From IMG/VR virus record IMGVR_UViG_3300025141_000016, positions 186,001 to 250,000 of that record: a stretch of DNA of 64,000 nucleotides; one strand, given 5' to 3'. The notes below the pieces were generated by a model. That model saw only the letters and a program-made list of their open reading frames with translations, ran no database searches and was not told the origin of the DNA. The position numbers were made by a program, and so were the translations under genes. Positions 10,614 through 61,229 of the stretch are shown piece by piece (position 1 is the stretch's first letter; every line of letters begins with the position of its first letter).

Positions 10614-11824
10614 CGGACCCGTAGGGTCAGGAGAAACTAACCATGTCCAAGACCATTACCGCTTCTGACCGGAGCCGATTGATTCGACTCGCTTCAACAA
10701 TGTCTGCTGGCTCTCCCGAGCGGAAGGCCATCCTCGCTGGGTTGTCAAAGACCGCTGGAGAACACCCGCTGGGCCGCATGGCAATCGTCTACTTCGATTT
10801 GATCATTGAGGCTTACAACATTGAGGAGGACGCGGAAAACGGTGACGAGTTCGCACAGAGCCTCATGGATGATGGTGGTCGAGGTATGAACAAGTTGGAG
10901 GGTGACGCTCTCAAAAACCTGTCCCGCATGTTCGGACAGCGAATCAGCAACGAGGGGCATGGCCCCGACGGCGCACTTGTCTGCAAGTTCCCAGTGAACT
11001 CGTGGGCAGAGGTCAAGAAAGCCAATGACGTAATCAACAAGAACCACACTGGCGGTGACGATAACATCGACACGGGCGTTCAGTACGTTGAGGCACGGGA
11101 CTTTCGCCTCCACCCGGAGGGCGTGGGACAAAATCAGGCTTTCTACGGTGAGCACTCCCGTGCAGAGGGTGATTGGGACGAGTGGCTGTCCGACCACAAG
11201 TAATCCCTATCGGACCCGTAGGGTCAGGAGAAACTAACCATGCCCAAGACCATTACCGCTTCTGACCGAGCCAGCTTGATCCGGCTCGCTTCCTGTCTAC
11301 CCGTAGAGCGGAAGGCAATCCTGGCTGGGCTCCAGAAGACGGCAGCCATGGAGCCGTGGGATTCCCCCGATTACGTCTTTGAAGACCCAAAGGATGAAGA
11401 TGACTACATCACTCTCTTTGAGGAAGGGACCACACGCCACTACGATGTGAACGTCTCTGGCCGCGTGGATTCAGCGAAGGATGGGCTCCTCCTACTCCAC
11501 AAGGAGTTCGGTCGTGGGGGTAAGGAAAGCCGCGACTTTGAGGGTCAGTACCTCTGGGGGACAGGCTACTCCATCACAGCGATCCCCCCAAACAATCTGT
11601 CCTATGAGCGGTGGCATAACGACAAGGCCCACTTGGCAAAGATCCACAAGGTTCTGGACAGGATCAAGAAGATGCCAGGAGTCAAAAAGGTCAGCTTGGA
11701 GGAACGGCCCGACAGTGCAGACCTGCATAAGAAACAAGGGCAGGCCATGAAGCGGTGGGTCGCCAAGGGTCGGACCCTGCGAACTGCGAAGAAGACACCC
11801 TATCGGACCCGTAGGGTCAGGAGA
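10608..11824 (+). repeat. three exact 27-nt leader repeats CCCTATCGGACCCGTAGGGTCAGGAGA
   Basis: Copies at 10608-10634, 11205-11231 and 11798-11824, each followed by ATG and a tag-A coding sequence; internal hairpin GACCC-GTA-GGGTC. Confidence 0.95.
10643..11203 (+). CDS. tag-A protein, hypothetical cargo
   Basis: MSKTITASDRSRLIRLASTMSAGSPERKAILAGLSKTA. Confidence 0.85.
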   Translation: MSKTITASDRSRLIRLASTMSAGSPERKAILAGLSKTAGEHPLGRMAIVYFDLIIEAYNIEEDAENGDEFAQSLMDDGGRGMNKLEGDALKNLSRMFGQRISNEGHGPDGALVCKFPVNSWAEVKKANDVINKNHTGGDDNIDTGVQYVEARDFRLHPEGVGQNQAFYGEHSRAEGDWDEWLSDHK

Positions 11825-14711: not shown

Positions 14712-15061
14712 GGGAACGTCCTCTGCTGGGTTCTGGGTTCCTCTACCTGTACCGGCCAACACCCCCTCTCGCACCCCCCTGTAGGAGTCCCCGCCCCCGA
14801 AACGCAATACTTGAAACGTACTTGTGACTACTCGATACATGGCCCATGTGACAGTCACAATCGTGAATGAAGTATTGGGGCTCCTGGGTATCGGGTTTCG
14901 CCCACCGTTAGCGGGGGGTTGGGGAGGCCGAATACAAGGTGGTTGTGATTATCACGAACACGATCCCTCCCTGTGAGGCCCGCCAATCCAGAGAACAAGT
15001 CAAGCCCCCGGAGATTTTTCTGGCATGGGGTTTGCATGGGAAAATACTGTATTGGGTAAAT

Positions 15062-15157
15062 GTAACTGTTAGGTTTGCAAACGTAACTACATGGTATGCA
15101 AACGTAACTGTATTGGTTGCGTTTGTGACAGTCACGATTGGCGTTCGTGACTGTCAC
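15062..15157. repeat. phased array of 11-bp palindromes GTRACWGTYAC (five units, some degenerate)
   Basis: Units start at 15062, 15083, 15104, 15125 and 15147 (spacing 21, 21, 21, 22); a lone copy at 14848. Confidence 0.85.
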
Positions 15158-15640: not shown

Positions 15641-15694
15641 GTGACTGTCACAAGGGGTGCCTGTAACAGTCACAAGTGCATCTGTGACTGTTAC
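15641..15694. repeat. phased palindrome array (three units)
   Basis: GTGACTGTCAC 15641, GTAACAGTCAC 15663, GTGACTGTTAC 15684. Confidence 0.85.
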
Positions 15695-15759: not shown

Positions 15760-16200
15760 TCAGGCAGCGGACTCCTCGTCCTCCGCAGCCGCGACCTCGG
15801 TGGCACTGACCACTGAAACCGACAGAGCCGGGAAGGTCACCTTGCCCTTGCAGTCGGTCAGGGTCGGTCCCTTGACCGCAGCGATAGCGACCTTGGCCCT
15901 CTTCTTGAGGGACGCGATCAGCTTGGGGTCGGCGGTGAGGGCTTCGCGGGTGAGGGAATCGACGGTCACGCCGTTGAGGTGGCTCAATGCCGCAGCCAGG
16001 AGCGTCCAGGGGTCAGCCTTGGCCACGATGGGCTGGGTGTAGTCATCACCGCAACGGGTAGTGGCGACCGTGTGCAGGGTGACGATCTCGTCCACGTCGT
16101 TATCCCCGACGGGGAGGTCAGCGCGGGTCGCGGATTTCGCAGCGGCGAGCGCCTTATGAAGTGCCGCGATGGTCGCGGGGGAGAGGGAAGTGAGGTCCAT
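15760..16200 (-). CDS. hypothetical protein
   Basis: ATG 16200 after hairpin and GGAGA; has its own class E promoter. Confidence 0.75.
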   Translation of the reverse strand: MDLTSLSPATIAALHKALAAAKSATRADLPVGDNDVDEIVTLHTVATTRCGDDYTQPIVAKADPWTLLAAALSHLNGVTVDSLTREALTADPKLIASLKKRAKVAIAAVKGPTLTDCKGKVTFPALSVSVVSATEVAAAEDEESAA

Positions 16201-16274
16201 GAGAAGTCTCCATTGGCCCGTCATTCGGGCTCGTGGGGGGTGTTTTGTGTGGGTAGCGGGGCTCCCTACACTCC

Positions 16275-16307
16275 TATACGGAGAAGCAAGGGGGAGTTGA
16301 ACCCCCC
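16275..16307 (-). promoter_or_regulatory. class E promoter GGGGGGTTCAAC-N15-CGTATA
   Basis: One of eight copies with invariant spacing. Confidence 0.8.
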
Positions 16308-16328
16308 TCCGTCGAGAAAGTTGAGGGT

Positions 16329-16610
16329 TTAGAACGGCATGTCTTGGTCGTCTGCGGCCCAGGCGGGGATGACGGGTTGGTCCTGGGGCACCACAATGTC
16401 ATCCCCCGACGGCGTGTACCCGTAGATTTCGGCGGCAGTGGGCTCCCGCTCGTCCTCGTCCGGTTCGGGTCCGTAGACCACAGCAGCCAGGAGGTCGTGG
16501 CACCGTGCGAGTTCGGCTTCCTGCTGCTCTGGGAGCAGGGAGGGTGAGCGGTAGCCAGCGAGGGCGAAGTACGCCTCGCGGATGGTGGAGAGCAGTTCAG
16601 CGTGGGTCAT
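16329..16610 (-). CDS. hypothetical protein
   Basis: GGAG RBS; acidic C-terminus ending DDQDMPF. Confidence 0.65.
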   Translation of the reverse strand: MTHAELLSTIREAYFALAGYRSPSLLPEQQEAELARCHDLLAAVVYGPEPDEDEREPTAAEIYGYTPSGDDIVVPQDQPVIPAWAADDQDMPF

Positions 16611-16789
16611 GTGGCTCCGGGGGTGGTCTGTTCGGGCGAAGGTGCGTCAGGGTGCCATCCACACTTGAAGCAGCCCTTCCTCGTGTAGATGCCCACCTCT
16701 CCTTTGGGGAGGAAGGTCACGACGTTCTTGATGGCCTTTTTCTTACCGCACTGTTGGCACTTGGTCTTGATGGTCATGGTGCCGGTCAT
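16607..16789 (-). CDS. small Zn-ribbon protein
   Basis: CQQC...CFKC. Confidence 0.55.
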   Translation of the reverse strand: MTGTMTIKTKCQQCGKKKAIKNVVTFLPKGEVGIYTRKGCFKCGWHPDAPSPEQTTPGAT

Positions 16790-16807
16790 GGGAGGTTCCA
16801 GAGAGGG

Positions 16808-16984
16808 TCAAAGGGTGTAGTCGATCTCGACCACCCCCCGCTCGGGGGCGGGGTCCGGTCGTTCCAGCACAGGACGGGGAGGCACAGGACGAGGTGCATA
16901 GAGGGGGAGCCGTCGGCGCTCGCTCTCGCGTTCCTCACGCTCGCGGCGTTCGCGCTCGATGATGGCTGGGTGGATGTGGGTCAT
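16808..16984 (-). CDS. 58-aa charged protein (below the ORF-track cutoff)
   Basis: MTHIHPAIIERERREREERESERRRLPLYAPRPVPPRPVLERPDPAPERGVVEIDYTL; GGAGG RBS directly after a class E promoter. Confidence 0.7.
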   Translation of the reverse strand: MTHIHPAIIERERREREERESERRRLPLYAPRPVPPRPVLERPDPAPERGVVEIDYTL

Positions 16985-17001
16985 AGTAGGGCCTCCACCC
17001 T

Positions 17002-17034
17002 TATACGGAGATAGGGGGGTGAGTTGAACCCCCC
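17002..17034 (-). promoter_or_regulatory. class E promoter
   Basis: GGGGGGTTCAAC-N15-CGTATA. Confidence 0.8.
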
Positions 17035-17052
17035 AAAACCAAGTATTCGGGT

Positions 17053-17138
17053 GTGACAGTCACGTTTTGGGCGCGGTTTTGCCTGTGACAGTCACGTTTG
17101 AAAACGTGACTGTCACGTTTAGGGGGTGTGACAGTCAC
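17053..17138. repeat. palindrome array (four perfect GTGACWGTCAC)
   Basis: Units at 17053, 17085, 17106 and 17128. Confidence 0.9.
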
Positions 17139-17156
17139 GTTTAGGGGGTGTGGGGG

Positions 17157-17453
17157 TCAAGCGGTCCCTGCGGTGGCCTCGACCTCTTCCCAGCCGAAGG
17201 AAGCGCATCGGAGGACACGTCCATCCGACAGGCGGATGCGGTCACCGACGGAGGTGGAGCGGCATCCCTCACCAGGGAAGGTCGAGGTGACCAGAGCGTT
17301 CTCCCACCAGTAGTGTTCGATGGTGTTGGTCAGTTCAAAGACGCGGGGGTAGTCCGCGTCGGGCAGGTCCACATCAGCGACGTGGATGAACTCGGTGGGC
17401 TCCGGCCCGGACCCGAAGGTGGGGCGAGTGGCGTGAAAGACTGCGATGGACAT
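17157..17453 (-). CDS. YodL-like domain protein
   Basis: VFELTN...RSTSVGD...FGWEEV resembles the YodL RS[LM]SVGD motif; ATG 17453. Confidence 0.6.
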   Translation of the reverse strand: MSIAVFHATRPTFGSGPEPTEFIHVADVDLPDADYPRVFELTNTIEHYWWENALVTSTFPGEGCRSTSVGDRIRLSDGRVLRCASFGWEEVEATAGTA

Positions 17454-17514
17454 GGGCGCTCCTGTTGGCCTCTCGATGAGGCTCGTGGGGATGAGGGAAG
17501 GTTCTCTCACCCCC

Positions 17515-17547
17515 TATACGGAGATAGGAGGCCGAGTTGAACCCCCC
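17515..17547 (-). promoter_or_regulatory. class E promoter
   Basis: GGGGGGTTCAAC-N15-CGTATA. Confidence 0.8.
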
Positions 17548-17548
17548 C

Positions 17549-17762
17549 TGTCGTAAATAGGTAGAGCGCCGTCGGCCTTACTCAACCAGAAAGGTCTTTC
17601 GCCCCACCGGAGAGTAGCCTCGGGCGGGTGTCGTAAATCGGAAGGGCACCGTCGGGCTTACTCAACCGGAAAGGTCTTTCGCCCCACCGAGGAGTAGCCT
17701 CGGGTGTCGTAGATAGGCAGAGCCCCGTTGGGCTTACTCAACCGGAAAGGTCTTTCGCCCCA
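17549..17762. repeat. tandem repeat of a 76-80 bp unit (about 2.7 copies), possibly a structured RNA
   Basis: Units at 17549, 17629 and 17705 share CTTACTCAACCRGAAAGGTCTTTCGCCCCA; inverted partial copy at 18035-18060. Confidence 0.85.
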
Positions 17763-18052
17763 ACTTGCGGGGGGTGGAACCACAGGTCCAGTTCTGGAAC
17801 CACAGGTCCAGGGGCGCTCCCCCGTTGTTGTAAAAACCCCTGATCGGGGTGTCATCAGAACGGCGTGCGCGAAAACCCCAGTGAAGGCAAGGGTTTAGCG
17901 AATCGGGCGGCCCCGAGGACATCCCCGAGACCTCGGACGACATCGCTGTGGGAGGCTTGTGGGGTCAGATCGGTGACCCCACGGGTGAGACTACCGCCGT
18001 CTCGGACGGCAGCCGTTCCCCGTGGAACACGGGTCAACGGTGCCCTTCCGAT

Positions 18053-18574
18053 CTACGACACCCACTCGCCCCCACCGATGAAGGCCACGTCGGACCACAT
18101 CTCGGTGTTCAGGTCCAGTTGTCCTGGCACTATCCCACCGAGCGCGGTGTTCAGGTCGCGAATGATGTTGAAGGCGAGGTCGAAGTCTACGTCCTGAATC
18201 GCCCGTAGGGCTCTGCGGAGCCACGGAGCCATGGAGAGCCCTTCCTCCTCGGCCTGCTCTATCTCCTCTTGGGAGAAGACCGAGGGGACTTCCTTGCCGG
18301 TGTCTACATCGGTGCCGTTCACCTCGACGTTCCACCACCACCACACCTCACGGGACAGCCGGAGGTAGGGGTGGGTCTGGAGGTGGCCCCGGATGAGGGC
18401 ATCTCCTCCCACGTCCCTGACGAGCAGGGTCCGTCGGAACGTGCCGAGGGTCGAATCGGGCGGGAAGCTGTCGAGGTTTGCGGCACTCTCCAGCCGTTCG
18501 GCGTGCCGGGTTTCCAGCACGGTGTTGATCTCCATCTCGGAGAGGGGGAACAGGACGCGGATAGGGGTAGTCAT
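18053..18574 (-). CDS. hypothetical protein, paralog of 3772-4275
   Basis: GGAGG RBS; FPLSEMEI...PWLRRALRAI...MWSDV. Confidence 0.75.
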   Translation of the reverse strand: MTTPIRVLFPLSEMEINTVLETRHAERLESAANLDSFPPDSTLGTFRRTLLVRDVGGDALIRGHLQTHPYLRLSREVWWWWNVEVNGTDVDTGKEVPSVFSQEEIEQAEEEGLSMAPWLRRALRAIQDVDFDLAFNIIRDLNTALGGIVPGQLDLNTEMWSDVAFIGGGEWVS

Positions 18575-18641
18575 CGGGCACCTCCACAGGGGTAGACGCA
18601 GGGGGGTGTCCACTTCGCACACTTGGGGGGCCAGAAACGAC

Positions 18642-18673
18642 AAAAGCCCCCACTCCCAGGCGGGAGTGGGGGC
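18642..18673 (-). terminator. intrinsic terminator
   Basis: GCCCCCACTCCC-GCCT-GGGAGTGGGGGC-TTTT. Confidence 0.75.
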
Positions 18674-18764
18674 GGCGGATGTGTAGTCGGGGGGATGGGG
18701 GCTGAAACCCACCGCCCACGACCCCGAACAAGGCATCTGGGGGGCCGTGAGGGCGGGCAGGAGG

Positions 18765-19217
18765 TCAGGTAGGCTTGAAGCCCACCCTGGGAGTGGGTTC
18801 GGCTCGTTCGATGGCTTTGAGCACGTCTGGCACCTCGCCAGAAGCCTTGCGGGTCTTGATGACCGCATCAATGTCCTTGCGAGCGTCGTACCGCACGTTC
18901 GTCACGAAGTAAGTGTCGAAGCAGTCTCCGAGGACGTGGCGCACCACGTCCCAATCAGTGCCCTTGCGAGCCTTGAACCGGGGCGACGGGAACGTCACGG
19001 ACACGCTTCCAGCATCGGTGTCGTAGTGGACGTGGCTCTCGTCCCCCCGCTGGGTAGACGCAAGGTCACGAAGGAGAGCCTTCAGGGGGTCCAGAGCCTC
19101 CTGGGCGTTAGAGATATGGCCCGCGAGGCGGCAAGCCACGCGGGCGATTTCCTGGGCGCTGCCCCCGCGCTTGGCGAGGTCAGTGGCTTCGGTAATGAGG
19201 GGGGTCAGGTCTTTCAT
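18765..19217 (-). CDS. hypothetical protein
   Basis: ATG 19217 after GGAG. Confidence 0.7.
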   Translation of the reverse strand: MKDLTPLITEATDLAKRGGSAQEIARVACRLAGHISNAQEALDPLKALLRDLASTQRGDESHVHYDTDAGSVSVTFPSPRFKARKGTDWDVVRHVLGDCFDTYFVTNVRYDARKDIDAVIKTRKASGEVPDVLKAIERAEPTPRVGFKPT

Positions 19218-19268
19218 GGGGATACTCCAGGGGCCGGTTGGACACCGACCCAAAAGTGGGTCAGGTGT

Positions 19269-20150
19269 CTACAGCGCGATGGCGCACTCCGTGTGGAAGA
19301 CTCCACGCCCTTCAACATGGGCAGCGGTGGCGTTGGCCTCGATGGTGCCCTTGCATCCCTCTGCCGAGCAGACGCAGGCGAAGGGGACCACGACGGTCGA
19401 GTAGTCAACCGAGGAAGTGGTGGCCTCGGGAGTCGGAGCCATGGACGTTTTCAGGGCAGCTACCAACCGCGCACGTTCGGCAGCGAGTTCGGCCTCGGCC
19501 TTGGCGACCTCGGCAGCGAACTCAGCATCGAGTTCGGAGGCCACCGTCGCCAGGGTGGTGATGGTCGATGCTTGGCACAGCCCAGCCAGAGGGCACCCCT
19601 CGCACTGCGAAGACCGTGAGGACCACAGGCTGAAGCAGTGGGTGTTGTCGATGGCCACGCGCCGGAGGTCAGCCTCCGTAGCGTAGGACCCGGCAGTCAC
19701 GGCACCGACGGGGGGCAGGTAAGCCATCCCCGAATCCTCGGTGATCACGGAGATCGCCGCTGGGGCTTCCTCGGTGGCTTCCTCGGTGACCATCTCGGTC
19801 AGGGTGACCGCTGCCATCGTCTCTACCTCGGTAGCCTCGGTGACTTCCGGTGCTGGCGCAGCAGCCAACTCGGAGGCCAAGGCGTAGTACCCGCGACGTG
19901 GGTTGACGGCCATACCGTCCTTCTTCAAGCGCCCACCCGCGAGGGTGACGGCTCGGTGTCCGGCGAAGTAGGGCTTGCCCCGCTTCATCTTCGTGCCCCA
20001 GGTACCCCAGCCAGGGAAATCGGTCAGGGACTCGATATGGGCGATCACGTCGCGGAACCGTACTTCCTCCCCTCGGGGTCCGAGGGCGCGGAGCGCGGCC
20101 AGGACATAGGGCATCCAAGCCGTGGTTTCCAGGGTGGTCGGGAAGTTCAT
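19269..20150 (-). CDS. Mrr-N-like winged-helix protein with Cys-rich C-terminal domains
   Basis: VLAALRALG...RLKKDG...PRRGYYAL; CEGCPL...C; CVC...HTEC. Confidence 0.6.
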   Translation of the reverse strand: MNFPTTLETTAWMPYVLAALRALGPRGEEVRFRDVIAHIESLTDFPGWGTWGTKMKRGKPYFAGHRAVTLAGGRLKKDGMAVNPRRGYYALASELAAAPAPEVTEATEVETMAAVTLTEMVTEEATEEAPAAISVITEDSGMAYLPPVGAVTAGSYATEADLRRVAIDNTHCFSLWSSRSSQCEGCPLAGLCQASTITTLATVASELDAEFAAEVAKAEAELAAERARLVAALKTSMAPTPEATTSSVDYSTVVVPFACVCSAEGCKGTIEANATAAHVEGRGVFHTECAIAL

Positions 20151-20226
20151 GGGGTGTCTCCAGTTGCCTCGCTCGATGCGGGTCATGGGGATGGGGTGAA
20201 AGGGTGCGGGGACGCCCCTACACTTC

Positions 20227-20259
20227 TATACGGAGAAGCAAGGGGGGGTTGAACCCCCC
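20227..20259 (-). promoter_or_regulatory. class E promoter
   Basis: GGGGGGTTCAAC-N15-CGTATA. Confidence 0.8.
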
Positions 20260-20271
20260 TGCCTGTTGGTT

Positions 20272-21489
20272 TCAGTCAGTTTCCTCGTCAGTGAAGCAAC
20301 CGCCGGTCACCACAGCGTCGATCAGGCGCATCGCGATGGTCCGAGAGTCCTTGTCCAGCCGGTGCAACCACGCTGCGAAACCCCTCTTCAAGAGGTTGGC
20401 AGGAGGGGTGCCGTCGGACAGCCAGAGCACGTCTTCGCACTCCGACAGGACTTCACACAGACCACGGTGGGTGAACTCCGCGTAGAGTTCTTCCGACTCG
20501 ATAGCCGCACGAATCTTGTCCGTAGCCTTGCCCAACTGGTCGATGACGGCAGGTGCCGCTTCTACCAGCGCCGGGTACTTCGACCGCAGGATCGCGGACT
20601 CATCATCCCAGTGCATGTGGGTGAACTCAACGAACCGACCCATCCGGTCGAGGATCGAAGCATCCATCCGCTGACTCGACATACGACCCGTCTCGTCACC
20701 CGTACCGCAGGAGTTCGCGGTGAAAGCGAACTGCGTTCCAGGGAACAAGGTGTGGACTTCACCCGTCGGACCAACGATCCGCTTGGAGGTGGTGTCCAGG
20801 GTCAACCGGAACTCCTCAATCTGCTCGGGGGTGCCCCGGTCAACATCGGAGAACAGGATCAGCGCGGGACGCGCAACACCGTCGGTTCCAACAACACCGT
20901 TGACGATGGCGTTCCAGAGAGTCCCGTAGGACCATGAGGTGCCAGCGTCGGTGATCTCGCGGGAGTAGAACCACCGCTTCACTTCCGTACCCGGAGTGAA
21001 GGTGTAGGCGAACGCCGGAGTGCGGGTGTAGCTGGAGAAGGCGTGAACCACCGCATCCTTACCGGTTCCGGGGCCACCCCAGATGAACACGGCACGCTTC
21101 TTGGCGAGGGCCAGGAGCGCACGCTGGTAAGCGGTGCGTGCCTTCCCTTTGGTGGGGAACGCATAGGCCCAGGGGAGGGGCAGGCAGAAGTGGAGGGGAA
21201 TCCCATGGTCCACTCGACACACGACTCCGAGGAGATCGCGGGTCAGGTCGGTGACCTCGGGAGCCGCCTTACGCCGCTTCCCTTTGAGGGCGCGGTCAAA
21301 GGCATCCAGAGCCTTGGTGCTGACGGTGAGAGCGCCAGGGTGAGCATCGAGGTACGCCTCGGGGGTCATCCCGTGAGCCTCGACCACATGGTCGAGCAGG
21401 GAGTGGGCGCGGTGTCCACACTCGATGCACTCGACGCGACCATCAACCACCGTGAGGTTGGGCGCGAGAGCAGTTGCAGCAGCAGGCAT
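20272..21489 (-). CDS. MoxR/CobS-like AAA+ ATPase with N-terminal C2H2 Zn finger
   Basis: CIEC...H...H; Walker A GGPGTGKD; atypical Walker B LILFSDVD; TANS; ASILDR. Confidence 0.85.
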   Translation of the reverse strand: MPAAATALAPNLTVVDGRVECIECGHRAHSLLDHVVEAHGMTPEAYLDAHPGALTVSTKALDAFDRALKGKRRKAAPEVTDLTRDLLGVVCRVDHGIPLHFCLPLPWAYAFPTKGKARTAYQRALLALAKKRAVFIWGGPGTGKDAVVHAFSSYTRTPAFAYTFTPGTEVKRWFYSREITDAGTSWSYGTLWNAIVNGVVGTDGVARPALILFSDVDRGTPEQIEEFRLTLDTTSKRIVGPTGEVHTLFPGTQFAFTANSCGTGDETGRMSSQRMDASILDRMGRFVEFTHMHWDDESAILRSKYPALVEAAPAVIDQLGKATDKIRAAIESEELYAEFTHRGLCEVLSECEDVLWLSDGTPPANLLKRGFAAWLHRLDKDSRTIAMRLIDAVVTGGCFTDEETD

Positions 21490-21574
21490 TGGGAGTCTCC
21501 AGTTGGCCTCTCGATGAGGCATAGGGAAGATGAAAGGGAACAGGATGGGGGGGTGTGCTCACCCCCTGCACCCA

Positions 21575-21607
21575 TATACGGAGATAGGGGGGTGAGTTGA
21601 ACCCCCC
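21575..21607 (-). promoter_or_regulatory. class E promoter
   Basis: GGGGGGTTCAAC-N15-CGTATA. Confidence 0.8.
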
Positions 21608-21626
21608 TGGAGGAAGAAAAGGTAAG

Positions 21627-21653
21627 AAAACTGACCCCCCGGAGGGGGTCAGT
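21627..21653 (-). terminator. intrinsic terminator
   Basis: ACTGACCCCC-TCCG-GGGGGTCAGT-TTT immediately after the VWA gene. Confidence 0.7.
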
Positions 21654-21657
21654 GAGA

Positions 21658-23307
21658 TTAGCGGAACCCGCCACTGGCCATCAGGCCGTCCAATGCGGCC
21701 TTCTTGGCGTGCTTCGGGAACACGATGGTCGAGATAGTCTCCATCATGCGCTTGGCCAGGGTATCCAAACTCGGGACCGTGACGTGCAACGGGAACAGGT
21801 TGGTCACAGCGTACCCGTCCTCGCCAATGCCCACGCCGATGACGAAGATGCCAGCCTCGGCAGCGAGCCGAATCTGGCGACGAACGACGCGGGGGCAGTC
21901 GGGCTGACCGTCAGTGAGCACCAGAATCACCCGATACCGCTCCTCGCGAGTGGACAACTCCTGCATGGCGAACTGGATGCCGTCAGACAGAGGCGTGCCC
22001 CCAGAAGCCGTGTAGCTACCGAAGCGGTCCTTGCAGGTTCGGAAGGGCTCATCCCAATCCTTGAAAAGATCGATCCGAGCACCCGAGATCCGGTGGAACG
22101 AAGCGTCGTCTTCGTTGTACTGCTCGGTCGTCGTGTAGGGAGCCCGACGACCGTTCCGAGGACCACAGCACATGACCGGAGAACCCAGGGTGTCGAACGC
22201 CTCGGCCATAGCGACCATCGCTGTCGCTGCCGACCGAGCGCGACTACCACGCATCGAGCCCGACTGGTCACCAACGACTGCGACCGCGATGGACACATCG
22301 TCCGACTTGACGTTCTGGAAGTAGGGGCGGCTGGGCCGGATACCCGACTTGATCTCGATGAACGACTCAACCAGACGACGCTCCGAGAGATCCTTTCCAC
22401 GGCGGGTGCCATGAATGACCTTCTTGGTCTTGGCCATCAGGAACTTCGCCCGGAACTGCGAGCGGATGCCCGCAGTCAGGAGTCGGGCATCATCCCGGTA
22501 AATCTTGGCCATGCCATTGTAGCCCCCGCTGGGACGAACGATCTCATCCAGGCTCGGGTCGAAGGGTCGCCAAACCTGCTCATAATCGAGGCAATCGTCA
22601 TCGCGCTCACCCTCGGTGGCACTACCCATCGCCTCGTTGTTGTCGAGCAGGTCCGTGTCGTTCGCTTCCAGAGCAGCCAGGAGGCCATCGAGAAACGCCT
22701 TGGGATCATCGCCCAGGTCGCAGTGACCCCCAGCCAGTGCATCCGAACCGGCACCCTCGGCACCGGGGTCACCGAAGTCATCGGAACCGTCACCGGCTGC
22801 GCCATCGGAGTCACCACCGGAGTCGCCACCGGAGTCACCACCGGAGTCGCCATCGGAGTCGCCGTCACCGTCTCCGTCTCCGTCGCCCGAGCCTTCGCCC
22901 TCACCGTCGGAGTCATCACCCTCGGAGTCGCCATCACCGGAGCCTTCACCGTCGGTGTCTTCGTCGGTATCCTCACCGCCCTCACCGTCGGAGCCTTCAC
23001 CGTCGGAGCCTTCACCGTCGGCATCAGTGTCGGCATCTTCACCGTCGCCTTCACCGTCGCCTTCACCGTCGCCTTCACCGTCGGTGTCTTCGTCGGTATC
23101 CTCGGTGTCTTCGTCGGTATCCTCGGTGTCATCACCCTCCGAGCCCTCGCCACCCTCGGGGGTGCCGTCGGTCTCGTCGGACTTCTCACCGTCGCCGTCG
23201 CCGTCGCCGGACCCGTCGCTGTCATCCTCGCGGGGCAGCGGAGCGAGGTCCATGTTGGACCCCACCAACTCGGTTCCGAGTCGGAGCATGTAATCGAAAA
23301 GAGCCAT
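21658..23307 (-). CDS. CobT-like VWA (MIDAS) protein with a long D/E/G/S-rich linker
   Basis: DQSGSM, GGTPL, VLTDGQP, IGVGIG; acidic low-complexity tract at about 22730-23225. Confidence 0.85.
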   Translation of the reverse strand: MALFDYMLRLGTELVGSNMDLAPLPREDDSDGSGDGDGDGEKSDETDGTPEGGEGSEGDDTEDTDEDTEDTDEDTDGEGDGEGDGEGDGEDADTDADGEGSDGEGSDGEGGEDTDEDTDGEGSGDGDSEGDDSDGEGEGSGDGDGDGDGDSDGDSGGDSGGDSGGDSDGAAGDGSDDFGDPGAEGAGSDALAGGHCDLGDDPKAFLDGLLAALEANDTDLLDNNEAMGSATEGERDDDCLDYEQVWRPFDPSLDEIVRPSGGYNGMAKIYRDDARLLTAGIRSQFRAKFLMAKTKKVIHGTRRGKDLSERRLVESFIEIKSGIRPSRPYFQNVKSDDVSIAVAVVGDQSGSMRGSRARSAATAMVAMAEAFDTLGSPVMCCGPRNGRRAPYTTTEQYNEDDASFHRISGARIDLFKDWDEPFRTCKDRFGSYTASGGTPLSDGIQFAMQELSTREERYRVILVLTDGQPDCPRVVRRQIRLAAEAGIFVIGVGIGEDGYAVTNLFPLHVTVPSLDTLAKRMMETISTIVFPKHAKKAALDGLMASGGFR

Positions 23308-23414
23308 CTGTGTCTCCGGGGCCTCTCGATGAGGCGGGGAAGAAAGGAAAGGAGTCGGGTCTTATTTAGGTCGAACCCGAGAAACGACCGGGGGTGTGCT
23401 CACCCCTACACTTC

Positions 23415-23447
23415 TATACGGAGATACCCAAGGGAGTTGAACCCCCC
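23415..23447 (-). promoter_or_regulatory. class E promoter
   Basis: GGGGGGTTCAAC-N15-CGTATA. Confidence 0.8.
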
Positions 23448-23461
23448 TGGGCATAGGTTTT

Positions 23462-24562
23462 TTAGTCGTCTATGACCACCGCAAACTTCAAGCCCTGACG
23501 GCCATCAGCATCCGGCAGACCAGCGAAGGTCACCTCGACAATCTCGCCAGCGTGGGGTCCGACCTTGGCGCGAGCCCTGTCACCCACCCGGAAGACGGGG
23601 AACTTCGGGGCCTTGCCAGAGCCGCCCTCACCCTCGCCTTCCGACGGGGGACCGGGAGGTCCAGGCTCACTCTCACCACCACCATCGTTGGAGGGGGGTG
23701 GGGAAGCCGGGGGTGTGTCGTGGCCCAACGCCACCAGCAGGGCAACGATTTCCATCGCCAGCCACCAGTGCCCAAGGTCATCCTCGGGGGTCAGTGCAAT
23801 CGCACGGTCGAGCAAGGGCTTCAACGGACCCTCCGTCACCAGACGCCAACCAGCCGGGGACCGCTCACGGTAACCAGCCAGGGCTTCGTTCTGGCGGTCG
23901 GTGTCGTAGCCGAGTCCGAGATCACGGAAAGCACCCATCACGACCGAGAGGTCGTTGTGGGGGTCAATCCCTCGGTGCTCGGAAGCCTCACGACCCTCGG
24001 ACTCCATCTTCAAGATCAAATCCTGCAAGTCAGCCATCTTGTCAGGGGCACCAGGGTACTTGGCACACCCACACCGCTCGATGCGAATGTCCTCAATGAT
24101 GTTGCCCCAGGTCAACACGGCACCGATGTAGGGTCGCCAGTCAGCCAGGAGTGTCCAACGCTCGGACAGCGGACCCCACACGTCTTCTATGGTGAGGTCA
24201 CGACGGCAGGAGTATTCGGTGTGCCACGCCTCGTGGTAGTCACCACCGATCCCCGCACGCGCCAGCCAGAGGGGGATGCGGTCGGGGTTGGTCGCCACGA
24301 CGATGTGGGGGTCAGAGACATAGGTGGCGTTGGCAGCGTTGAGGGCATCCTCGACCATCTCATAGCTGAACTCGTTGCCATAAGACACCGATTCACACAG
24401 CTTCCCCTGCATCACGCGGCAAGTCCACTTGTCCTTGTTGAAGAAGGAGGAGCCTCGTGCGAGTACCTTACGAGCATCCGCTGTCCGAGGGTCAAGGATA
24501 GCGTTGACCGAAGCCTGATGGCTCGCGGCCCACTTCTTGCCGTTGATGGTGAGTTCAGCCAT
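23462..24562 (-). CDS. HExxH protein resembling the N-terminal half of CobT-like VWA partners
   Basis: YHEAWH...NIIEDIRIE...YPGA; ATG 24562. Confidence 0.7.
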   Translation of the reverse strand: MAELTINGKKWAASHQASVNAILDPRTADARKVLARGSSFFNKDKWTCRVMQGKLCESVSYGNEFSYEMVEDALNAANATYVSDPHIVVATNPDRIPLWLARAGIGGDYHEAWHTEYSCRRDLTIEDVWGPLSERWTLLADWRPYIGAVLTWGNIIEDIRIERCGCAKYPGAPDKMADLQDLILKMESEGREASEHRGIDPHNDLSVVMGAFRDLGLGYDTDRQNEALAGYRERSPAGWRLVTEGPLKPLLDRAIALTPEDDLGHWWLAMEIVALLVALGHDTPPASPPPSNDGGGESEPGPPGPPSEGEGEGGSGKAPKFPVFRVGDRARAKVGPHAGEIVEVTFAGLPDADGRQGLKFAVVIDD

Positions 24563-24637
24563 GGGGTGTCTCCGGGCCTCTCGGTGAGGCGTGGGAAAAG
24601 GTGAAAGGGGTGGGGGTGTAGATGACCCCCGCACCCC

Positions 24638-24670
24638 TATACGGAAATGCCAGGGGTAGTTGAACCCCCC
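24638..24670 (-). promoter_or_regulatory. class E promoter
   Basis: GGGGGGTTCAAC-N15-CGTATA. Confidence 0.8.
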
Positions 24671-24761
24671 TCCGGCAAGTTTTCTGCTGGAGGCCCAAAA
24701 TAAGTGGTGGTGGCTGACCCCCTGTGTGCGACAAGCCCCCCGACCCTCGGGCGTAGCCCAA

Positions 24762-24806
24762 GGGGAGAACCGTCCATCCCCCTAAAGGGGATGGACGGTT
24801 CTCCCC
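24762..24806. repeat. perfect 20-bp inverted repeat
   Basis: GGGGAGAACCGTCCATCCCC-CTAAA-GGGGATGGACGGTTCTCCCC. Confidence 0.95.
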
Positions 24807-24857
24807 GACCGGGGGTGCCAGCCGGGGGTGCCAGCCGTGCGGCCCGTCCCCCCTCCG

Positions 24858-24893
24858 GTGCATGAGTATGCACCCCCACGCATACTCATGCAC
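24858..24893. repeat. perfect 14-bp inverted repeat
   Basis: GTGCATGAGTATGC-ACCCCCAC-GCATACTCATGCAC. Confidence 0.95.
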
Positions 24894-25087
24894 GGTCTGT
24901 TCAGTGCCACAACGTCCGATAACGTACATTATGTCAAGTAGCGGGAACGGGCGAACCTGGGTTTTCGCCGTCCGTTCAGGTGAACACCTGTTCACACTGA
25001 ACACCCCTCTGTTCAGTGTCCCGTATGCACCGAATATGCAGGGACGGGGCCTACCCCCCTGGGGTAACCGTTACTTTTCTTGCCGAA

Positions 25088-25120
25088 GGGGGGTTCAACT
25101 CGGGCCGGTATCTCCGTATA
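25088..25120 (+). promoter_or_regulatory. class E promoter (divergent copy)
   Basis: GGGGGGTTCAAC-TCGGGCCGGTATCTC-CGTATA. Confidence 0.8.
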
Positions 25121-25182
25121 GAAGTGGAAGGACACCCCCCACCGATTCCCGCGCCCCATCGAGGGGCCATAGGAGACACCCC

Positions 25183-25776
25183 ATGAAGAAAGGACTCACC
25201 GTCGTCGTGCGCGAGCACGCTGACCTCTGGCGACCCGTCACTGCCGAGGAGACGGCAGAGTGGTACGCATCCCCCGAGAGTAAGGGGATGGACTGCGCTG
25301 GCGAGAGCAAGCTGCCACCCAGGTCTGTCTACCGCCGTGACACCAGCGGCACCTACACTGTCACACGCGCCCGCGTGAACGCTCCCCGTGGCTGGGGCTC
25401 GCTGCCCAAGTGCTCGGAGATCATGGACCTCGATGGAGTCCTCTGGTTCTGCCGCCGCCGTGACCTGCACTCCCTGACCCCCGTGACCCCCACGGTCAGC
25501 ACGATGGCCCCCGCGAGGGACGGCCTCGACGCGGAGATCGAGGAGTGGGTCGCCAAGGTCAACGCCAAGTACCCTGGCAGTCGCACCATCGAGTGGGGCC
25601 GCAAGTACGCCAAGGTCGTCCGTGGTGGCTCGGTCTACTGCTTCGTGGTCCGAAGCAACGGGGACATTATGAAGGCAGCCAACTGGCGAGCCCCGGCCAA
25701 GCACGCTCGCGGCAACATCCGTGACGCTGACCCGCTGGCTGGCGTGACCGACTACGGCGCAGCGTACCTCCGATGA
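25183..25776 (+). CDS. two-domain hypothetical phage protein
   Basis: ATG 25183 after hairpin and GGAGA; C-terminal GSVYCFV...GDIMKAANWRAPAKHARGNI motif, which I recall from phage proteins (not searched). Confidence 0.75.
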   Translation: MKKGLTVVVREHADLWRPVTAEETAEWYASPESKGMDCAGESKLPPRSVYRRDTSGTYTVTRARVNAPRGWGSLPKCSEIMDLDGVLWFCRRRDLHSLTPVTPTVSTMAPARDGLDAEIEEWVAKVNAKYPGSRTIEWGRKYAKVVRGGSVYCFVVRSNGDIMKAANWRAPAKHARGNIRDADPLAGVTDYGAAYLR

Positions 25777-26669: not shown

Positions 26670-26765
26670 GTGACTGTCACAAACGTAAACGTAACAGTCA
26701 CACTCGGTAAACGTAACAGTATGGTATGCAAACGTAACAGTTAGGTATGCAAACCTAACAGTCAC
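26670..26765. repeat. phased palindrome array (five units, some degenerate)
   Basis: Units at 26670, 26691, 26713, 26734 and 26755; shares GGTATGCAAACGTAAC with the 15062 array. Confidence 0.85.
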
Positions 26766-33575: not shown

Positions 33576-34187
33576 ATGAAGCTGATTCTGGAGTTCCGGT
33601 CGATGGAGGAGATGCGGGCATTTTGCCGGGAGCAGATGAGCCAAGAGGTTGTTGCTCCCCAGCGCGAGGTGCCTGTCAATGGGAGTTCCGATGCCCCGGT
33701 GTTGGAGGTTCCCGAGGACCAAGAGTCCATTACGGGGTTGGGCAAACGCCAAGTAGCTGTGTTGCGTGCCCTTGCTGATGGGGCGCACCGCCCAACGAAG
33801 TGGATCTCGGAGGAGATTGGTCTTGCCGTCCCCGCCCTCTCCACGACCCTCACAAGCCTCGCCAAGCGTGGATTGGTGAACAGGGTCAAGTGGGGCACCT
33901 GGGCCAAGGCTGACGGCGCTCCTGGGGTTCCCGAGGCCCCCGAGCCGGTAGTGGAGCCGGAGGTGGTTGAGACTCCCCCTGTGGAAGTGGGGGTCACCCC
34001 TCCCCCACCCAAGCCCAAGCGAAAGGCGAAGCCCAAGCCCAAGCCCAAGCCCAAGCCCAAGGCGAAAGAGAAAGAGAAAGAGAAAGAGAAGACCGAGCCG
34101 CCCACGACCCCTTTCCCTCCGTGGACCGGATATGAGGGTGAGGAGCAGGTGTTCTCGACGGTCGATCAGATCCTCGGAGACATTTGA
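33576..34187 (+). CDS. winged-helix DNA-binding protein with a KP/KE-repeat tail
   Basis: RQVAVLRAL...ISEEIGL...LSTTLTSLAKRGLV...GTW; KPKPKP/EKEKEK tract. Confidence 0.75.
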   Translation: MKLILEFRSMEEMRAFCREQMSQEVVAPQREVPVNGSSDAPVLEVPEDQESITGLGKRQVAVLRALADGAHRPTKWISEEIGLAVPALSTTLTSLAKRGLVNRVKWGTWAKADGAPGVPEAPEPVVEPEVVETPPVEVGVTPPPPKPKRKAKPKPKPKPKPKAKEKEKEKEKTEPPTTPFPPWTGYEGEEQVFSTVDQILGDI

Positions 34188-60693: not shown

Positions 60694-60773
60694 CCCTGTG
60701 CGCCTCGGTGGTCGCTCCGTGAAGGGGGTCAACCACCTACCGAATGTCCGTAGAGGGCACAACGGAGAATGGT

Positions 60774-61229
60774 ATGAGCGCATCCCCCCAGAAAGTAGCC
60801 GAGCGGTGGGCCTCCGAAGCCAAGTTCTTCCGTGGCCTCCACAGTCGCAACAAGGGCATCTTCTTTCGTGGGGCCAAGAACCCCGGTGCCGGTGGCGGGG
60901 CTGGCTTTGGTGCTCTGGGACGTGGCCTTTATCTCGCGTGGGACAAGGGGATCGCCCAGTTCTTTGCTGACCGAGCCGGGGGTCAGGTATACGCCTACAA
61001 GATTCCGTCCAGCCTCAAACTGCTCGATGCCCAGAGCAGCGAGATGGCGACGATCAAGGAAGGGATGGGATTCAAGCCCTGGCAGTATTCAGACGATCCC
61101 ATGTACGCCGCTGTCGTCACAGCCGAGGTAAAAGACCTTGGATACGACGGGGTGATCTCCGACAAAGCGGCAGATGGCCTTGTCTTGTTCGATCCCCGTA
61201 AAGCGAAGCTGGTGGACCTACCGGAGTGA
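60774..61229 (+). CDS. tag-B ADP-ribosyltransferase-like protein
   Basis: SPQKVAERW; FFRG...LGRGLYLA...GYDGVI...LVLFDP. Confidence 0.7.
   Translation: MSASPQKVAERWASEAKFFRGLHSRNKGIFFRGAKNPGAGGGAGFGALGRGLYLAWDKGIAQFFADRAGGQVYAYKIPSSLKLLDAQSSEMATIKEGMGFKPWQYSDDPMYAAVVTAEVKDLGYDGVISDKAADGLVLFDPRKAKLVDLPE

What the first reader, a model, noticed from the sequence alone, without database searches (positions are those of the whole stretch)
16216..25167. Covarying boxB-like RNA hairpin immediately upstream of the RBS in class E leaders
Seen, in transcript sense: GCCTC-ATCGA-GAGGC (17468, 21506, 23321), GCCTC-ACCGA-GAGGC (24576), GCCCC-ATCGA-GGGGC (25153), GCCCG-AATGA-CGGGC (16216) and a bulged CGC-ATCGA-GCG variant (about 20170). 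Each lies a few nt before GGAG. Compensatory stem changes with a conserved A-N-N-G-A loop indicate an RNA structure. Established: lambda boxB is also a 5-bp stem with a 5-nt loop, bound by an arginine-rich peptide. Inference: an operator for a phage RNA-binding protein controlling translation, stability or antitermination across the whole regulon.
Basis: partly seen in the sequence, partly recalled or inferred. Interest (0 to 1): 0.74.

Follow-up and report, generated by a model that had tools for sequence, protein, structure and literature searches.

The report
Covarying RNA hairpin beside phage ribosome-binding sites
An uncultured marine giant phage and its relatives place a small RNA hairpin, kept intact by compensating mutations, a few bases upstream of the ribosome-binding site of many genes; it is real and not in Rfam, but whether a protein reads it is not shown.

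Summary

The window is part of a 297-kb marine metagenomic jumbo-phage record. A covariance model finds 15 copies in that record, 14 of them in the 15 long leaders behind one conserved promoter type.

Five related metagenomic phages keep a hairpin at the same place upstream of the same genes, although the promoter sequence has changed. There are about 20 different stems, 99% of cells are paired, all five pairs show double changes, and G.U wobbles occur in the sense strand only. For four orthologous genes in six phages, 22 of 24 upstream regions carry it; shuffles give about 1.

It is therefore an RNA structure tied to the ribosome-binding site, not a DNA operator or terminator.

The boxB/antitermination reading is weak:
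- there is no conserved boxA;
- there is one copy per gene, at a fixed distance from the SD;
- relatives mix R-N-N-G-A pentaloops with triloops and CUUG-type tetraloops;
- the Glu/Arg peptide is near neutral and was found only in the closest relative.

No RNA-binding partner was found. My best reading is a cis-acting hairpin next to the RBS that affects translation initiation or mRNA stability. A translational operator is the main rival. It has no Rfam match.

The parts
16216..16230 (-). RBS-proximal hairpin GCCCG-AATGA-CGGGC; SD GGAG at 16208-16211; ATG at 16198-16200 (146-aa ORF)
17468..17482 (-). Hairpin GCCTC-ATCGA-GAGGC; SD at 17459-17462; ATG at 17451-17453 (98-aa ORF)
20167..20182 (-). 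Variant hairpin CCCGC-ATCGA-GCG(A)GG with one bulge or C.A mismatch; SD at 20158-20161; ATG at 20148-20150 (293-aa ORF). The orthologue in L005 is a perfect CTCGC/GCGAG stem
21506..21520 (-). Hairpin GCCTC-ATCGA-GAGGC; SD at 21497-21500; ATG at 21487-21489 (405-aa CobS/MoxR-like AAA ATPase)
23321..23335 (-). Hairpin GCCTC-ATCGA-GAGGC; SD at 23314-23317; ATG at 23305-23307 (549-aa VWA/CobT-like protein)
24576..24590 (-). Hairpin GCCTC-ACCGA-GAGGC; SD at 24570-24573; ATG at 24560-24562 (366-aa ORF)
25153..25167 (+). Hairpin GCCCC-ATCGA-GGGGC on the other DNA strand, again in the sense of its gene; SD at 25172-25175; ATG at 25183-25185 (197-aa DUF7717 protein)
19231..19251 (-). Longer hairpin (8-bp stem, loop GTCCA) 2 nt before the SD of the 150-aa gene, with no promoter upstream. 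A hairpin stands at the orthologous place in all five relatives
10616..10628 (+). Triloop hairpin GACCC-GTA-GGGTC, 1 nt before GGAGA. First of three copies in front of tandem paralogues (also 11213-11225 and 11806-11818). Probably the same kind of module, but below the model's threshold
16273..16305 (-). Class E promoter cassette (GGGGTTCAACTC-N9-TCTCCGTATAGG) that heads the leader. The other copies are at 17000-17032, 17513-17545, 20225-20257, 21573-21605, 23413-23445 and 24636-24668 (all minus) and 25090-25122 (plus)

Best explanation
The element is a short RNA hairpin: a 5-bp G+C-rich stem with a 5-nt loop A-N-Y-G-A, transcribed as part of 5' leaders and some intercistronic spacers.

The leaders share a fixed layout:
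- a phage-type promoter;
- a stem-loop at the presumed 5' end;
- a G-poor, C-rich linker;
- the hairpin;
- CAAC or a similar unpaired spacer of 2-7 nt;
- GGAG(A);
- 5-8 nt;
- the start codon.

I think it acts in cis and after transcription, at the ribosome-binding site. It would be a small, fast-folding stem that marks the 5' edge of an otherwise unstructured initiation region. In that role it could shield the RBS-proximal mRNA from attack entering from the long linker, and it could keep the SD in the same context whatever lies upstream.

Shown: the structure, its covariation, its strand, its position and its distribution. Inferred: the effect on stability or translation, and the transcription start just after TATA. 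The same stem may also be read by an unidentified factor; I rate that as the main rival rather than the best reading.
For: Structure:
- 41 curated copies are 99% paired. All 5 pairs show double changes, in 51 cells. The covariation score is 0.712 against 0.161 in shuffles, and it collapses when the 3' partner is slid by 1-3 columns.
- 53 model-aligned copies give the same result.
- A test that does not depend on how copies were picked: of 24 regions upstream of 4 orthologous genes in 6 phages, 22 carry a perfect stem of at least 5 bp ending 1-8 nt before the SD. Shuffles give a mean of 0.96 and a maximum of 5.
- The hairpin is in the MFE and centroid fold of all 7 window leaders.

Tie to the RBS:
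- The spacer to GGAG is 2-7 nt (mode 5) and the distance to the start codon is 11-19 nt in 59 copies.
- The distance to the promoter varies from about 20 to 80 nt.
- It also occurs between cistrons where there is no promoter.
- It is present in 14 of 15 long class E leaders and in none of the 5 short ones, where the presumed 5' end already lies next to the SD.
- More distant relatives with short leaders lack it.

Stability rather than loop sequence:
- Relatives use triloops and G(CUUG)C-type tetraloops alongside R-N-N-G-A pentaloops.

No partner found:
- The record shows no S1, bS21, Csy4, RegB, sigma region 2 or T7-type RNA polymerase domain.
Against: - No expression data exist. No RNA run holds this phage, so neither the transcription start nor any effect on half-life or translation has been observed.
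- In this phage, loop positions 1, 4 and 5 are invariant in 15 of 15 copies while positions 2 and 3 vary. That is more constraint than bare stability seems to need, and it would suit a trans-acting reader.
- The hairpin is confined to one promoter class plus a few other genes. Genome-wide, 35 of 246 SD-led ORFs have such a hairpin against 13.6 expected. That pattern looks like a regulon.
- The record is only about 67% complete, so a missing partner gene proves little.
Confidence: 0.5

Rival explanations
1. It is a translational operator. An unidentified phage RNA-binding protein binds the hairpin plus the CAAC spacer next to the SD. It represses or activates translation of the whole class E set together, as T4 gp43 or RegA or the MS2 coat protein do for their targets.
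For: The position is right for blocking 30S binding. It is associated with one promoter class. Loop positions A1, G4 and A5 are invariant in 15 of 15 copies in this phage, and the 3' flank CAA(C) is conserved in about 40 of 59 copies.
Against: No candidate protein was found. Tests for known RNA-binding families were negative. The small proteins encoded nearby are not conserved in the fetched loci of hairpin-bearing relatives. Loops of 3, 4 and 5 nt coexist in a single relative's genome. Likeness of copies within one genome can also come from recombination between leader cassettes; for example, the L005 copies are nearly identical through the SD.
Confidence: 0.3
2. It is a processing site. An endoribonuclease (Cas6/Csy4-like in logic, or a host enzyme) recognises the stem and cuts in the CAAC spacer. 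That would free a standard short leader for each gene.
For: The layout (hairpin directly upstream of the RBS, conserved single-stranded 3' flank) matches what I know of Csy4 hairpins used as RBS insulators in synthetic biology. It also occurs between cistrons.
Against: There is no Csy4 domain in the record. No data on RNA ends exist.
Confidence: 0.1
3. It is a lambda-type nut site. A boxB-like hairpin loads an N-like antiterminator onto RNA polymerase, which then reads through the terminator-like stems that start each following promoter cassette.
For: It has a 5-bp stem and a 5-nt loop, and stems such as GCCCC/GGGGC resemble lambda boxB. In relatives the loop family R-N-N-G-A could fold like a GNRA-type pentaloop. 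Terminator-like palindromes head the cassettes.
Against: A boxA-like sequence occurs in 1 of 15 leaders only. The distance is fixed to the SD, not to the promoter. There is one copy per gene. Loops begin with A in this phage, and loops in relatives are heterogeneous. The Glu/Arg peptide is near neutral and poorly conserved.
Confidence: 0.04
4. It is a DNA-level element: either a palindromic operator for a dimeric repressor, or a hairpin promoter of the N4 virion-polymerase type that starts transcripts at GGAG.
For: It is an inverted repeat in DNA. The record holds a 3818-aa orphan ORF, the size of a virion RNA polymerase. GGAGA resembles the initial transcribed sequence of T7-type promoters (from my own knowledge).
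Against: The half-site sequence changes freely while complementarity is kept. U.G and G.U pairs occur in the sense strand and would be mismatches on the other strand. The loop is asymmetric and always in gene sense. By contrast, the true operator-like repeat of this region (GTRACAGTYAC, 12 copies) is constant in sequence and found in both orientations. The giant ORF matches nothing in Pfam, PHROGs or PDB.
Confidence: 0.03
5. It has no function of its own: a passenger in a duplicated promoter-leader cassette.
For: Copies within one genome are paralogous, and recombination between cassettes is plausible.
Against: Pairing is kept through about 20 different stems, across phages whose AAA proteins are only 51-63% identical and whose promoter sequence has changed.
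Confidence: 0.03

Closest known systems
Lambda/P22 boxB in nut sites (bound by the N arginine-rich motif)
   Same: 5-bp G+C-rich stem with a 5-nt loop. In relatives the loops fit R-N-N-G-A, which could adopt a GNRA-like pentaloop fold. It lies in early leaders.
   Different: No conserved boxA. One copy per gene, locked to the SD. The loop starts with A in this phage. Triloops and tetraloops substitute in relatives. No basic ARM peptide was found.
Phage translational operators: T4 gene 43 hairpin operator, the RegA regulon, MS2/PP7 coat-protein hairpins (T4 cases reviewed in PMC3014915)
   Same: RNA elements at or next to the ribosome-binding site. RegA, like this element, covers many early mRNAs.
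   Different: Those have known protein partners. Per that review, the gp43 loop is conserved between phages, and RegA sites lack structure. Here no partner is known and the loops are not conserved across the family.
E. coli ompA 5' UTR and other 5' stabiliser stem-loops (from my own knowledge)
   Same: A two-hairpin leader: one stem at the 5' end and one just upstream of the RBS, joined by a single-stranded segment.
   Different: That is a single host gene. Here the module is repeated in front of many phage genes and is conserved by covariation. An effect on stability is untested.
PeSL composite terminator/promoter cassettes of T4-like phages (PMC2839356, PMC4122927)
   Same: Repeated regulatory cassettes in front of many early genes, with a stem-loop joined to a promoter. 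Metagenome contigs join one cassette to another.
   Different: In a PeSL the stem-loop is the terminator part upstream of the promoter. The hairpin studied here lies downstream in the transcript, at the RBS.
Csy4 (Cas6f) repeat hairpin, also used as a synthetic RBS insulator (from my own knowledge)
   Same: 5-bp stem and 5-nt loop placed directly upstream of an RBS.
   Different: No Csy4 domain in the record. Cleavage was not observed.

Membership tests
lambda-type nut site (boxA + boxB) | boxB: short stem with a GNRA-like pentaloop | tested here: inconclusive
   The 5-bp stem and 5-nt loop are met. The loop is A-N-Y-G-A here and R-N-N-G-A in relatives; the fold was not determined.
lambda-type nut site (boxA + boxB) | Conserved boxA (CGCUCUU(U)A) a few nt upstream of boxB | tested here: not met
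   Only the leader at genome position 111504 has it: 1 of 15.
lambda-type nut site (boxA + boxB) | Placement relative to promoter and terminators, independent of ribosome-binding sites | tested here: not met
   It lies 2-7 nt from the SD in 59 copies, at a variable distance from the promoter, with one copy per gene.
lambda-type nut site (boxA + boxB) | Cognate basic arginine-rich N-like peptide | tested here: inconclusive
   The 58-aa peptide alternates Glu and Arg and is near neutral. Among the fetched loci a homologue is found only in L003. The record is incomplete.
Protein-bound translational operator | RNA element adjacent to or overlapping the SD or start codon | tested here: met
Protein-bound translational operator | Specific RNA-binding repressor or activator | not testable with these tools
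   No S1, bS21, Csy4 or RegB domains and no Pfam hit in the neighbouring small ORFs. Binding needs an experiment.
Intrinsic terminator | G+C-rich stem followed by a U run | tested here: not met
   The stem is followed by CAAC-GGAG and lies downstream of a promoter.
Double-stranded DNA operator (palindrome or stoperator type) | Conserved half-site sequence, read on duplex DNA | tested here: not met
   About 20 different stems with complementarity kept. Sense-strand G.U pairs. An asymmetric loop, always in gene sense. Contrast with the GTRACAGTYAC sites.
Any Rfam family | Match to a curated covariance model | tested here: not met
   No match at gathering score in the window. Nothing on the hairpins at E up to 1 in 16000-25400.
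5' UTR stabiliser or insulator hairpin | Stable stem next to the RBS in a long leader; effect on half-life or translation | tested here: inconclusive
   Position and stability are met. It is present only where the leader is long. The effect itself cannot be tested here.

The most novel reading that the evidence does not exclude
The hairpin-CAAC-GGAG module is the recognition site of a dedicated, still unidentified phage factor. This could be an RNA-binding translational regulator or a stem-specific endoribonuclease. It would give a family of uncultured marine jumbo phages regulon-wide post-transcriptional control of dozens of genes.
Probability: 0.3. Interest if true: 0.7.

Novelty: new variant of a known kind. 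Interest (0 to 1): 0.55.

Why it matters
Structured RNA motifs of uncultured giant phages are almost uncharted. This one has about 60 copies with clean covariation and a strict link to the ribosome-binding site, so it can go straight into an RNA family database.

It also offers a simple handle for asking how these phages organise early gene expression: one 15-nt stem to mutate in reporters or to use as bait. If a protein reads it, that protein would be a new post-transcriptional regulator. If none does, it is a natural example of the RBS 'insulator' hairpins that synthetic biologists design.

Tried and rejected
- SD sequestration. Folding pairs GGAGA with a pyrimidine tract 3-5 nt upstream of the hairpin in all 7 window leaders. 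In 59 copies, however, the probability of SD pairing with the 5' flank is 0.58, and 0.62 when the flank is shuffled. This is an effect of base composition, not of design.
- RNA evidence. No RNA run holds the phage. Laying four runs kept as assembled contigs (three apparently DNA, one of unknown kind) gave no molecule ends, only joints between promoter cassettes.
- Relatives in GenBank phages: none by megablast, and only two weak protein matches.
- A scan of IMG/VR with the promoter pattern gave one chance hit.
- Host search through species genomes found nothing.
- Domain searches in the record for T7-type RNA polymerase, sigma region 2, bS21, S1, Csy4 and RegB were all negative. The T7-polymerase and RegB searches had no positive control.
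- The 3818-aa ORF as a virion RNA polymerase: no Pfam, PHROG or PDB match.
- MAFFT plus RNAalifold on the orthologous upstream regions recovered only 4 pairs, because a gap column split the 3' arm. I used direct counting instead.
- Complex prediction was not run. I do not claim that the Glu/Arg peptide binds, and jobs with RNA get no verdict.
Full report
**Context**

The window is bases 186001-250000 of a single-contig virus record of 297,104 bp with 59.5% G+C. The record is classed as linear and about 67% complete.
- A 100% identical IMG/VR contig exists.
- The DNA is held by marine metagenome runs.
- No GenBank phage is close.

It is therefore an uncultured marine jumbo phage whose host is unknown.

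**The observation**

The pattern GCCNN-ANNGA-NNGGC occurs 7 times in the window against 1.0 expected. The seventh, at 34013, is a coding repeat. The bulged variant is at 20167-20182.

All seven copies are in the sense of the next gene. Each ends 2-5 nt before GGAG, which precedes an ATG by 5-7 nt. The genes behind them include a CobS/MoxR-like AAA ATPase, a VWA/CobT-like protein and a DUF7717 protein. The rest have no Pfam match.

**Anatomy of the leaders**

Each unit starts with a conserved cassette, GGGGTTCAACTC-N9-TCTCCGTATAGR.
- The whole record has 18 exact copies and 2 variants.
- Its first part is an extended palindrome whose flanks covary, followed by a T-rich stretch. It therefore looks like a terminator fused to a promoter.

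Downstream of TATAG there is usually a stem-loop, then a G-poor, C-rich linker, then the hairpin, then CAAC or similar, then GGAG(A) and the start codon. That transcription starts just after TATA is my inference.
- Of the 15 leaders long enough to hold it, 14 have the hairpin.
- The 5 leaders of about 20-45 nt have none.
- One further copy lies between two cistrons, at genome position 112188.

A covariance model built from 41 copies finds 15 in the record, all between genes and all in gene sense.

**Relatives**

The AAA protein has more than 170 metagenomic homologues, several on contigs of 180-370 kb. I fetched loci around nine of them.

In L003 (89% protein identity), L005 (63%), L007 (59%), L008 (60%) and L009 (51%), a hairpin stands directly upstream of CAAC-GGAG in front of the same genes. 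This holds although the promoter has changed to other sequences that share only a CCGTA-like core. The model finds about 40 copies in 80 kb of these loci.

More distant relatives have short leaders and essentially no such hairpin: L010, L032 and L033. L031 has two triloop versions.

**Covariation**

On the 41 curated copies:
- 99% of cells pair;
- all five pairs have double changes, in 51 cells;
- the covariation score is 0.712 against 0.161 for shuffles;
- sliding the partner by 1-3 columns drops pairing to 25-56%.

The 53 model-aligned copies give the same picture.

Because I picked those copies as hairpins, I also ran a test that uses gene orthology only. Of 24 upstream regions (four genes in six phages), 22 have a perfect stem of at least 5 bp with a 3-5-nt loop ending 1-8 nt before the SD. 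The other two are the mismatch variant. Shuffled flanks give a mean of 0.96 and at most 5.

The stem changes along single gene lines. Upstream of the AAA gene it runs GCCTC/GAGGC, then GCCGC/GCGGC, then GCCCC/GGGGC.

**RNA, not DNA**

- About 20 different stems keep complementarity.
- U.G and G.U pairs occur in the sense strand.
- The loop is asymmetric and always in gene sense, including the one copy on the plus strand.
- The distance is fixed to the SD, not to the promoter.

The same region holds a real operator-like DNA repeat, GTRACAGTYAC. It has 12 copies against 0.1 expected, is constant in sequence and occurs in both orientations. That is what a DNA site looks like here, and the hairpin behaves differently.

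**What it does**

In 59 copies:
- the spacer to GGAG is 2-7 nt (mode 5);
- the distance from the stem to the start codon is 11-19 nt;
- the 3' flank is CAAC in 26 copies and CAA-like in about 40.

Loops:
- In this phage and its two nearest relatives the loop is A-N-Y-G-A almost throughout. A1, G4 and A5 are invariant in 15 of 15 copies here, while positions 2 and 3 vary.
- In L007, L008 and L009, R-N-N-G-A pentaloops coexist with triloops and with CUUG or CUCG tetraloops closed by G-C.

From what I know of RNA hairpins, these are all compact, stable caps. R-N-N-G-A could be a triloop closed by a sheared R.A pair, or a GNRA-like pentaloop. That points to selection for a stable stem at a fixed place more than for one loop sequence.

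The hairpin appears only where the leader is long, and short leaders put the presumed 5' end next to the SD. I therefore favour a cis-acting role at the 5' edge of the ribosome-binding site, as a barrier or insulator affecting mRNA survival and initiation. The invariant loop positions and the link to one promoter class keep a protein-bound operator as a strong rival.

- A boxA-like sequence occurs in one leader only.
- The 58-aa peptide at 16808-16984 alternates Glu and Arg, has almost no net charge, and has a homologue only in L003 among the fetched loci.
- Domain searches for S1, bS21, Csy4, RegB, sigma region 2 and T7-type polymerase found nothing in the record. The record is incomplete, and two of these searches lacked a positive control.
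- No Rfam family matches.
- No RNA run holds the phage.

**A lead that failed**

Folding pairs the SD with a pyrimidine tract just upstream of the hairpin in all seven leaders. This would make a two-tier structure that hides the SD. But shuffling the flank gives the same pairing probability, 0.62 against 0.58 observed. The effect follows from composition alone.

**Specificity within the genome**

Among 246 ORFs led by GGAG, 35 have a 5-bp hairpin in this position against 13.6 expected. The excess is mostly:
- the class E set;
- three tandem paralogues with GACCC-GTA-GGGTC;
- a longer stem at 19231-19251 whose orthologous sites in all five relatives also carry a hairpin.

**Comparison and novelty**

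The element works like the known RBS-proximal leader structures. It is formally like boxB but fails the nut-site tests. It resembles a translational operator in position but has no known partner. It resembles the ompA-type two-hairpin leader in layout. The cassettes that carry it recall PeSLs of T4-like phages (PMC4122927).

I rate it as a new variant of a known kind: a well-supported RNA motif not yet in Rfam, found in a clade of uncultured marine jumbo phages, with its mechanism open.

**Limits**

- Copies within one genome are paralogous and may exchange by recombination, so cell counts overstate the number of independent events.
- The model's E-values are rough.
- Every functional statement is inference.

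Noticed in passing
window 16273-16305, 17000-17032, 17513-17545, 20225-20257, 21573-21605, 23413-23445, 24636-24668 (minus strand); 25090-25122 (plus strand): The promoter cassette GGGGTTCAACTC-N9-TCTCCGTATAGR has 20 copies in the record. Its first half is a covarying palindrome followed by T-rich sequence, so it looks like a terminator fused to a promoter. A CCGTA-like core persists in relatives whose other promoter bases differ, which hints at a phage-specific polymerase or factor. No T7-type polymerase or sigma region 2 was found.
   Followed up: partly
window, just downstream of each TATAG, e.g. 23385-23412 and 24605-24635 (minus strand): A second stem-loop, variable in sequence, lies at the presumed 5' end of most long leaders (for example GGGGTG...CACCCC). 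It was predicted by folding and not analysed for covariation.
   Followed up: no
window 14848-15157, 15641-15694, 17053-17138, 26670-26701: There are twelve copies of the near-palindrome GTRACAGTYAC against 0.1 expected. They cluster in intergenic regions in both orientations. L003 has similar TGTAACAGTCACA sites. They are likely DNA operators or iterons.
   Followed up: partly
window 10616-10628, 11213-11225, 11806-11818 (plus strand): Three tandem paralogous genes are each preceded by the identical stretch CCCTATCG-GACCC-GTA-GGGTC-A-GGAGA, a triloop hairpin abutting the SD.
   Followed up: partly
genome 155169-166625 (outside the window; locus L018): A 3818-aa ORF has no match in Pfam, PHROGs or PDB sequences. 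Several other ORFs of 1700-2000 aa lie nearby, two of them with beta-helix repeats.
   Followed up: partly
window 20191-21575, 20258-21558, 20216/25171, 20259/24673: Contigs from other marine runs join one class E cassette to another, skipping or inverting the genes between. This is either assembly collapse at the repeats or real cassette-mediated shuffling, as described for PeSLs.
   Followed up: no
window 20272-21489 and 21658-23307 (minus strand): A CobS/MoxR-like AAA ATPase carries an N-terminal Ros/MucR-like zinc ribbon. It sits next to a VWA/CobT-like protein whose first 200 or so residues are an Asp/Gly/Glu-rich repeat. The pair is conserved across the whole phage family.
   Followed up: partly
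window 60715-60782 (plus strand): A degenerate copy of the promoter cassette (GGGGGTCAAC...TGTCCGTAGAGGG) has a short leader. Its -10-like part itself forms a 5-bp stem with a 5-nt loop followed by CAAC-GGAGA, and it scores weakly with the hairpin model (18.6 bits).
   Followed up: partly
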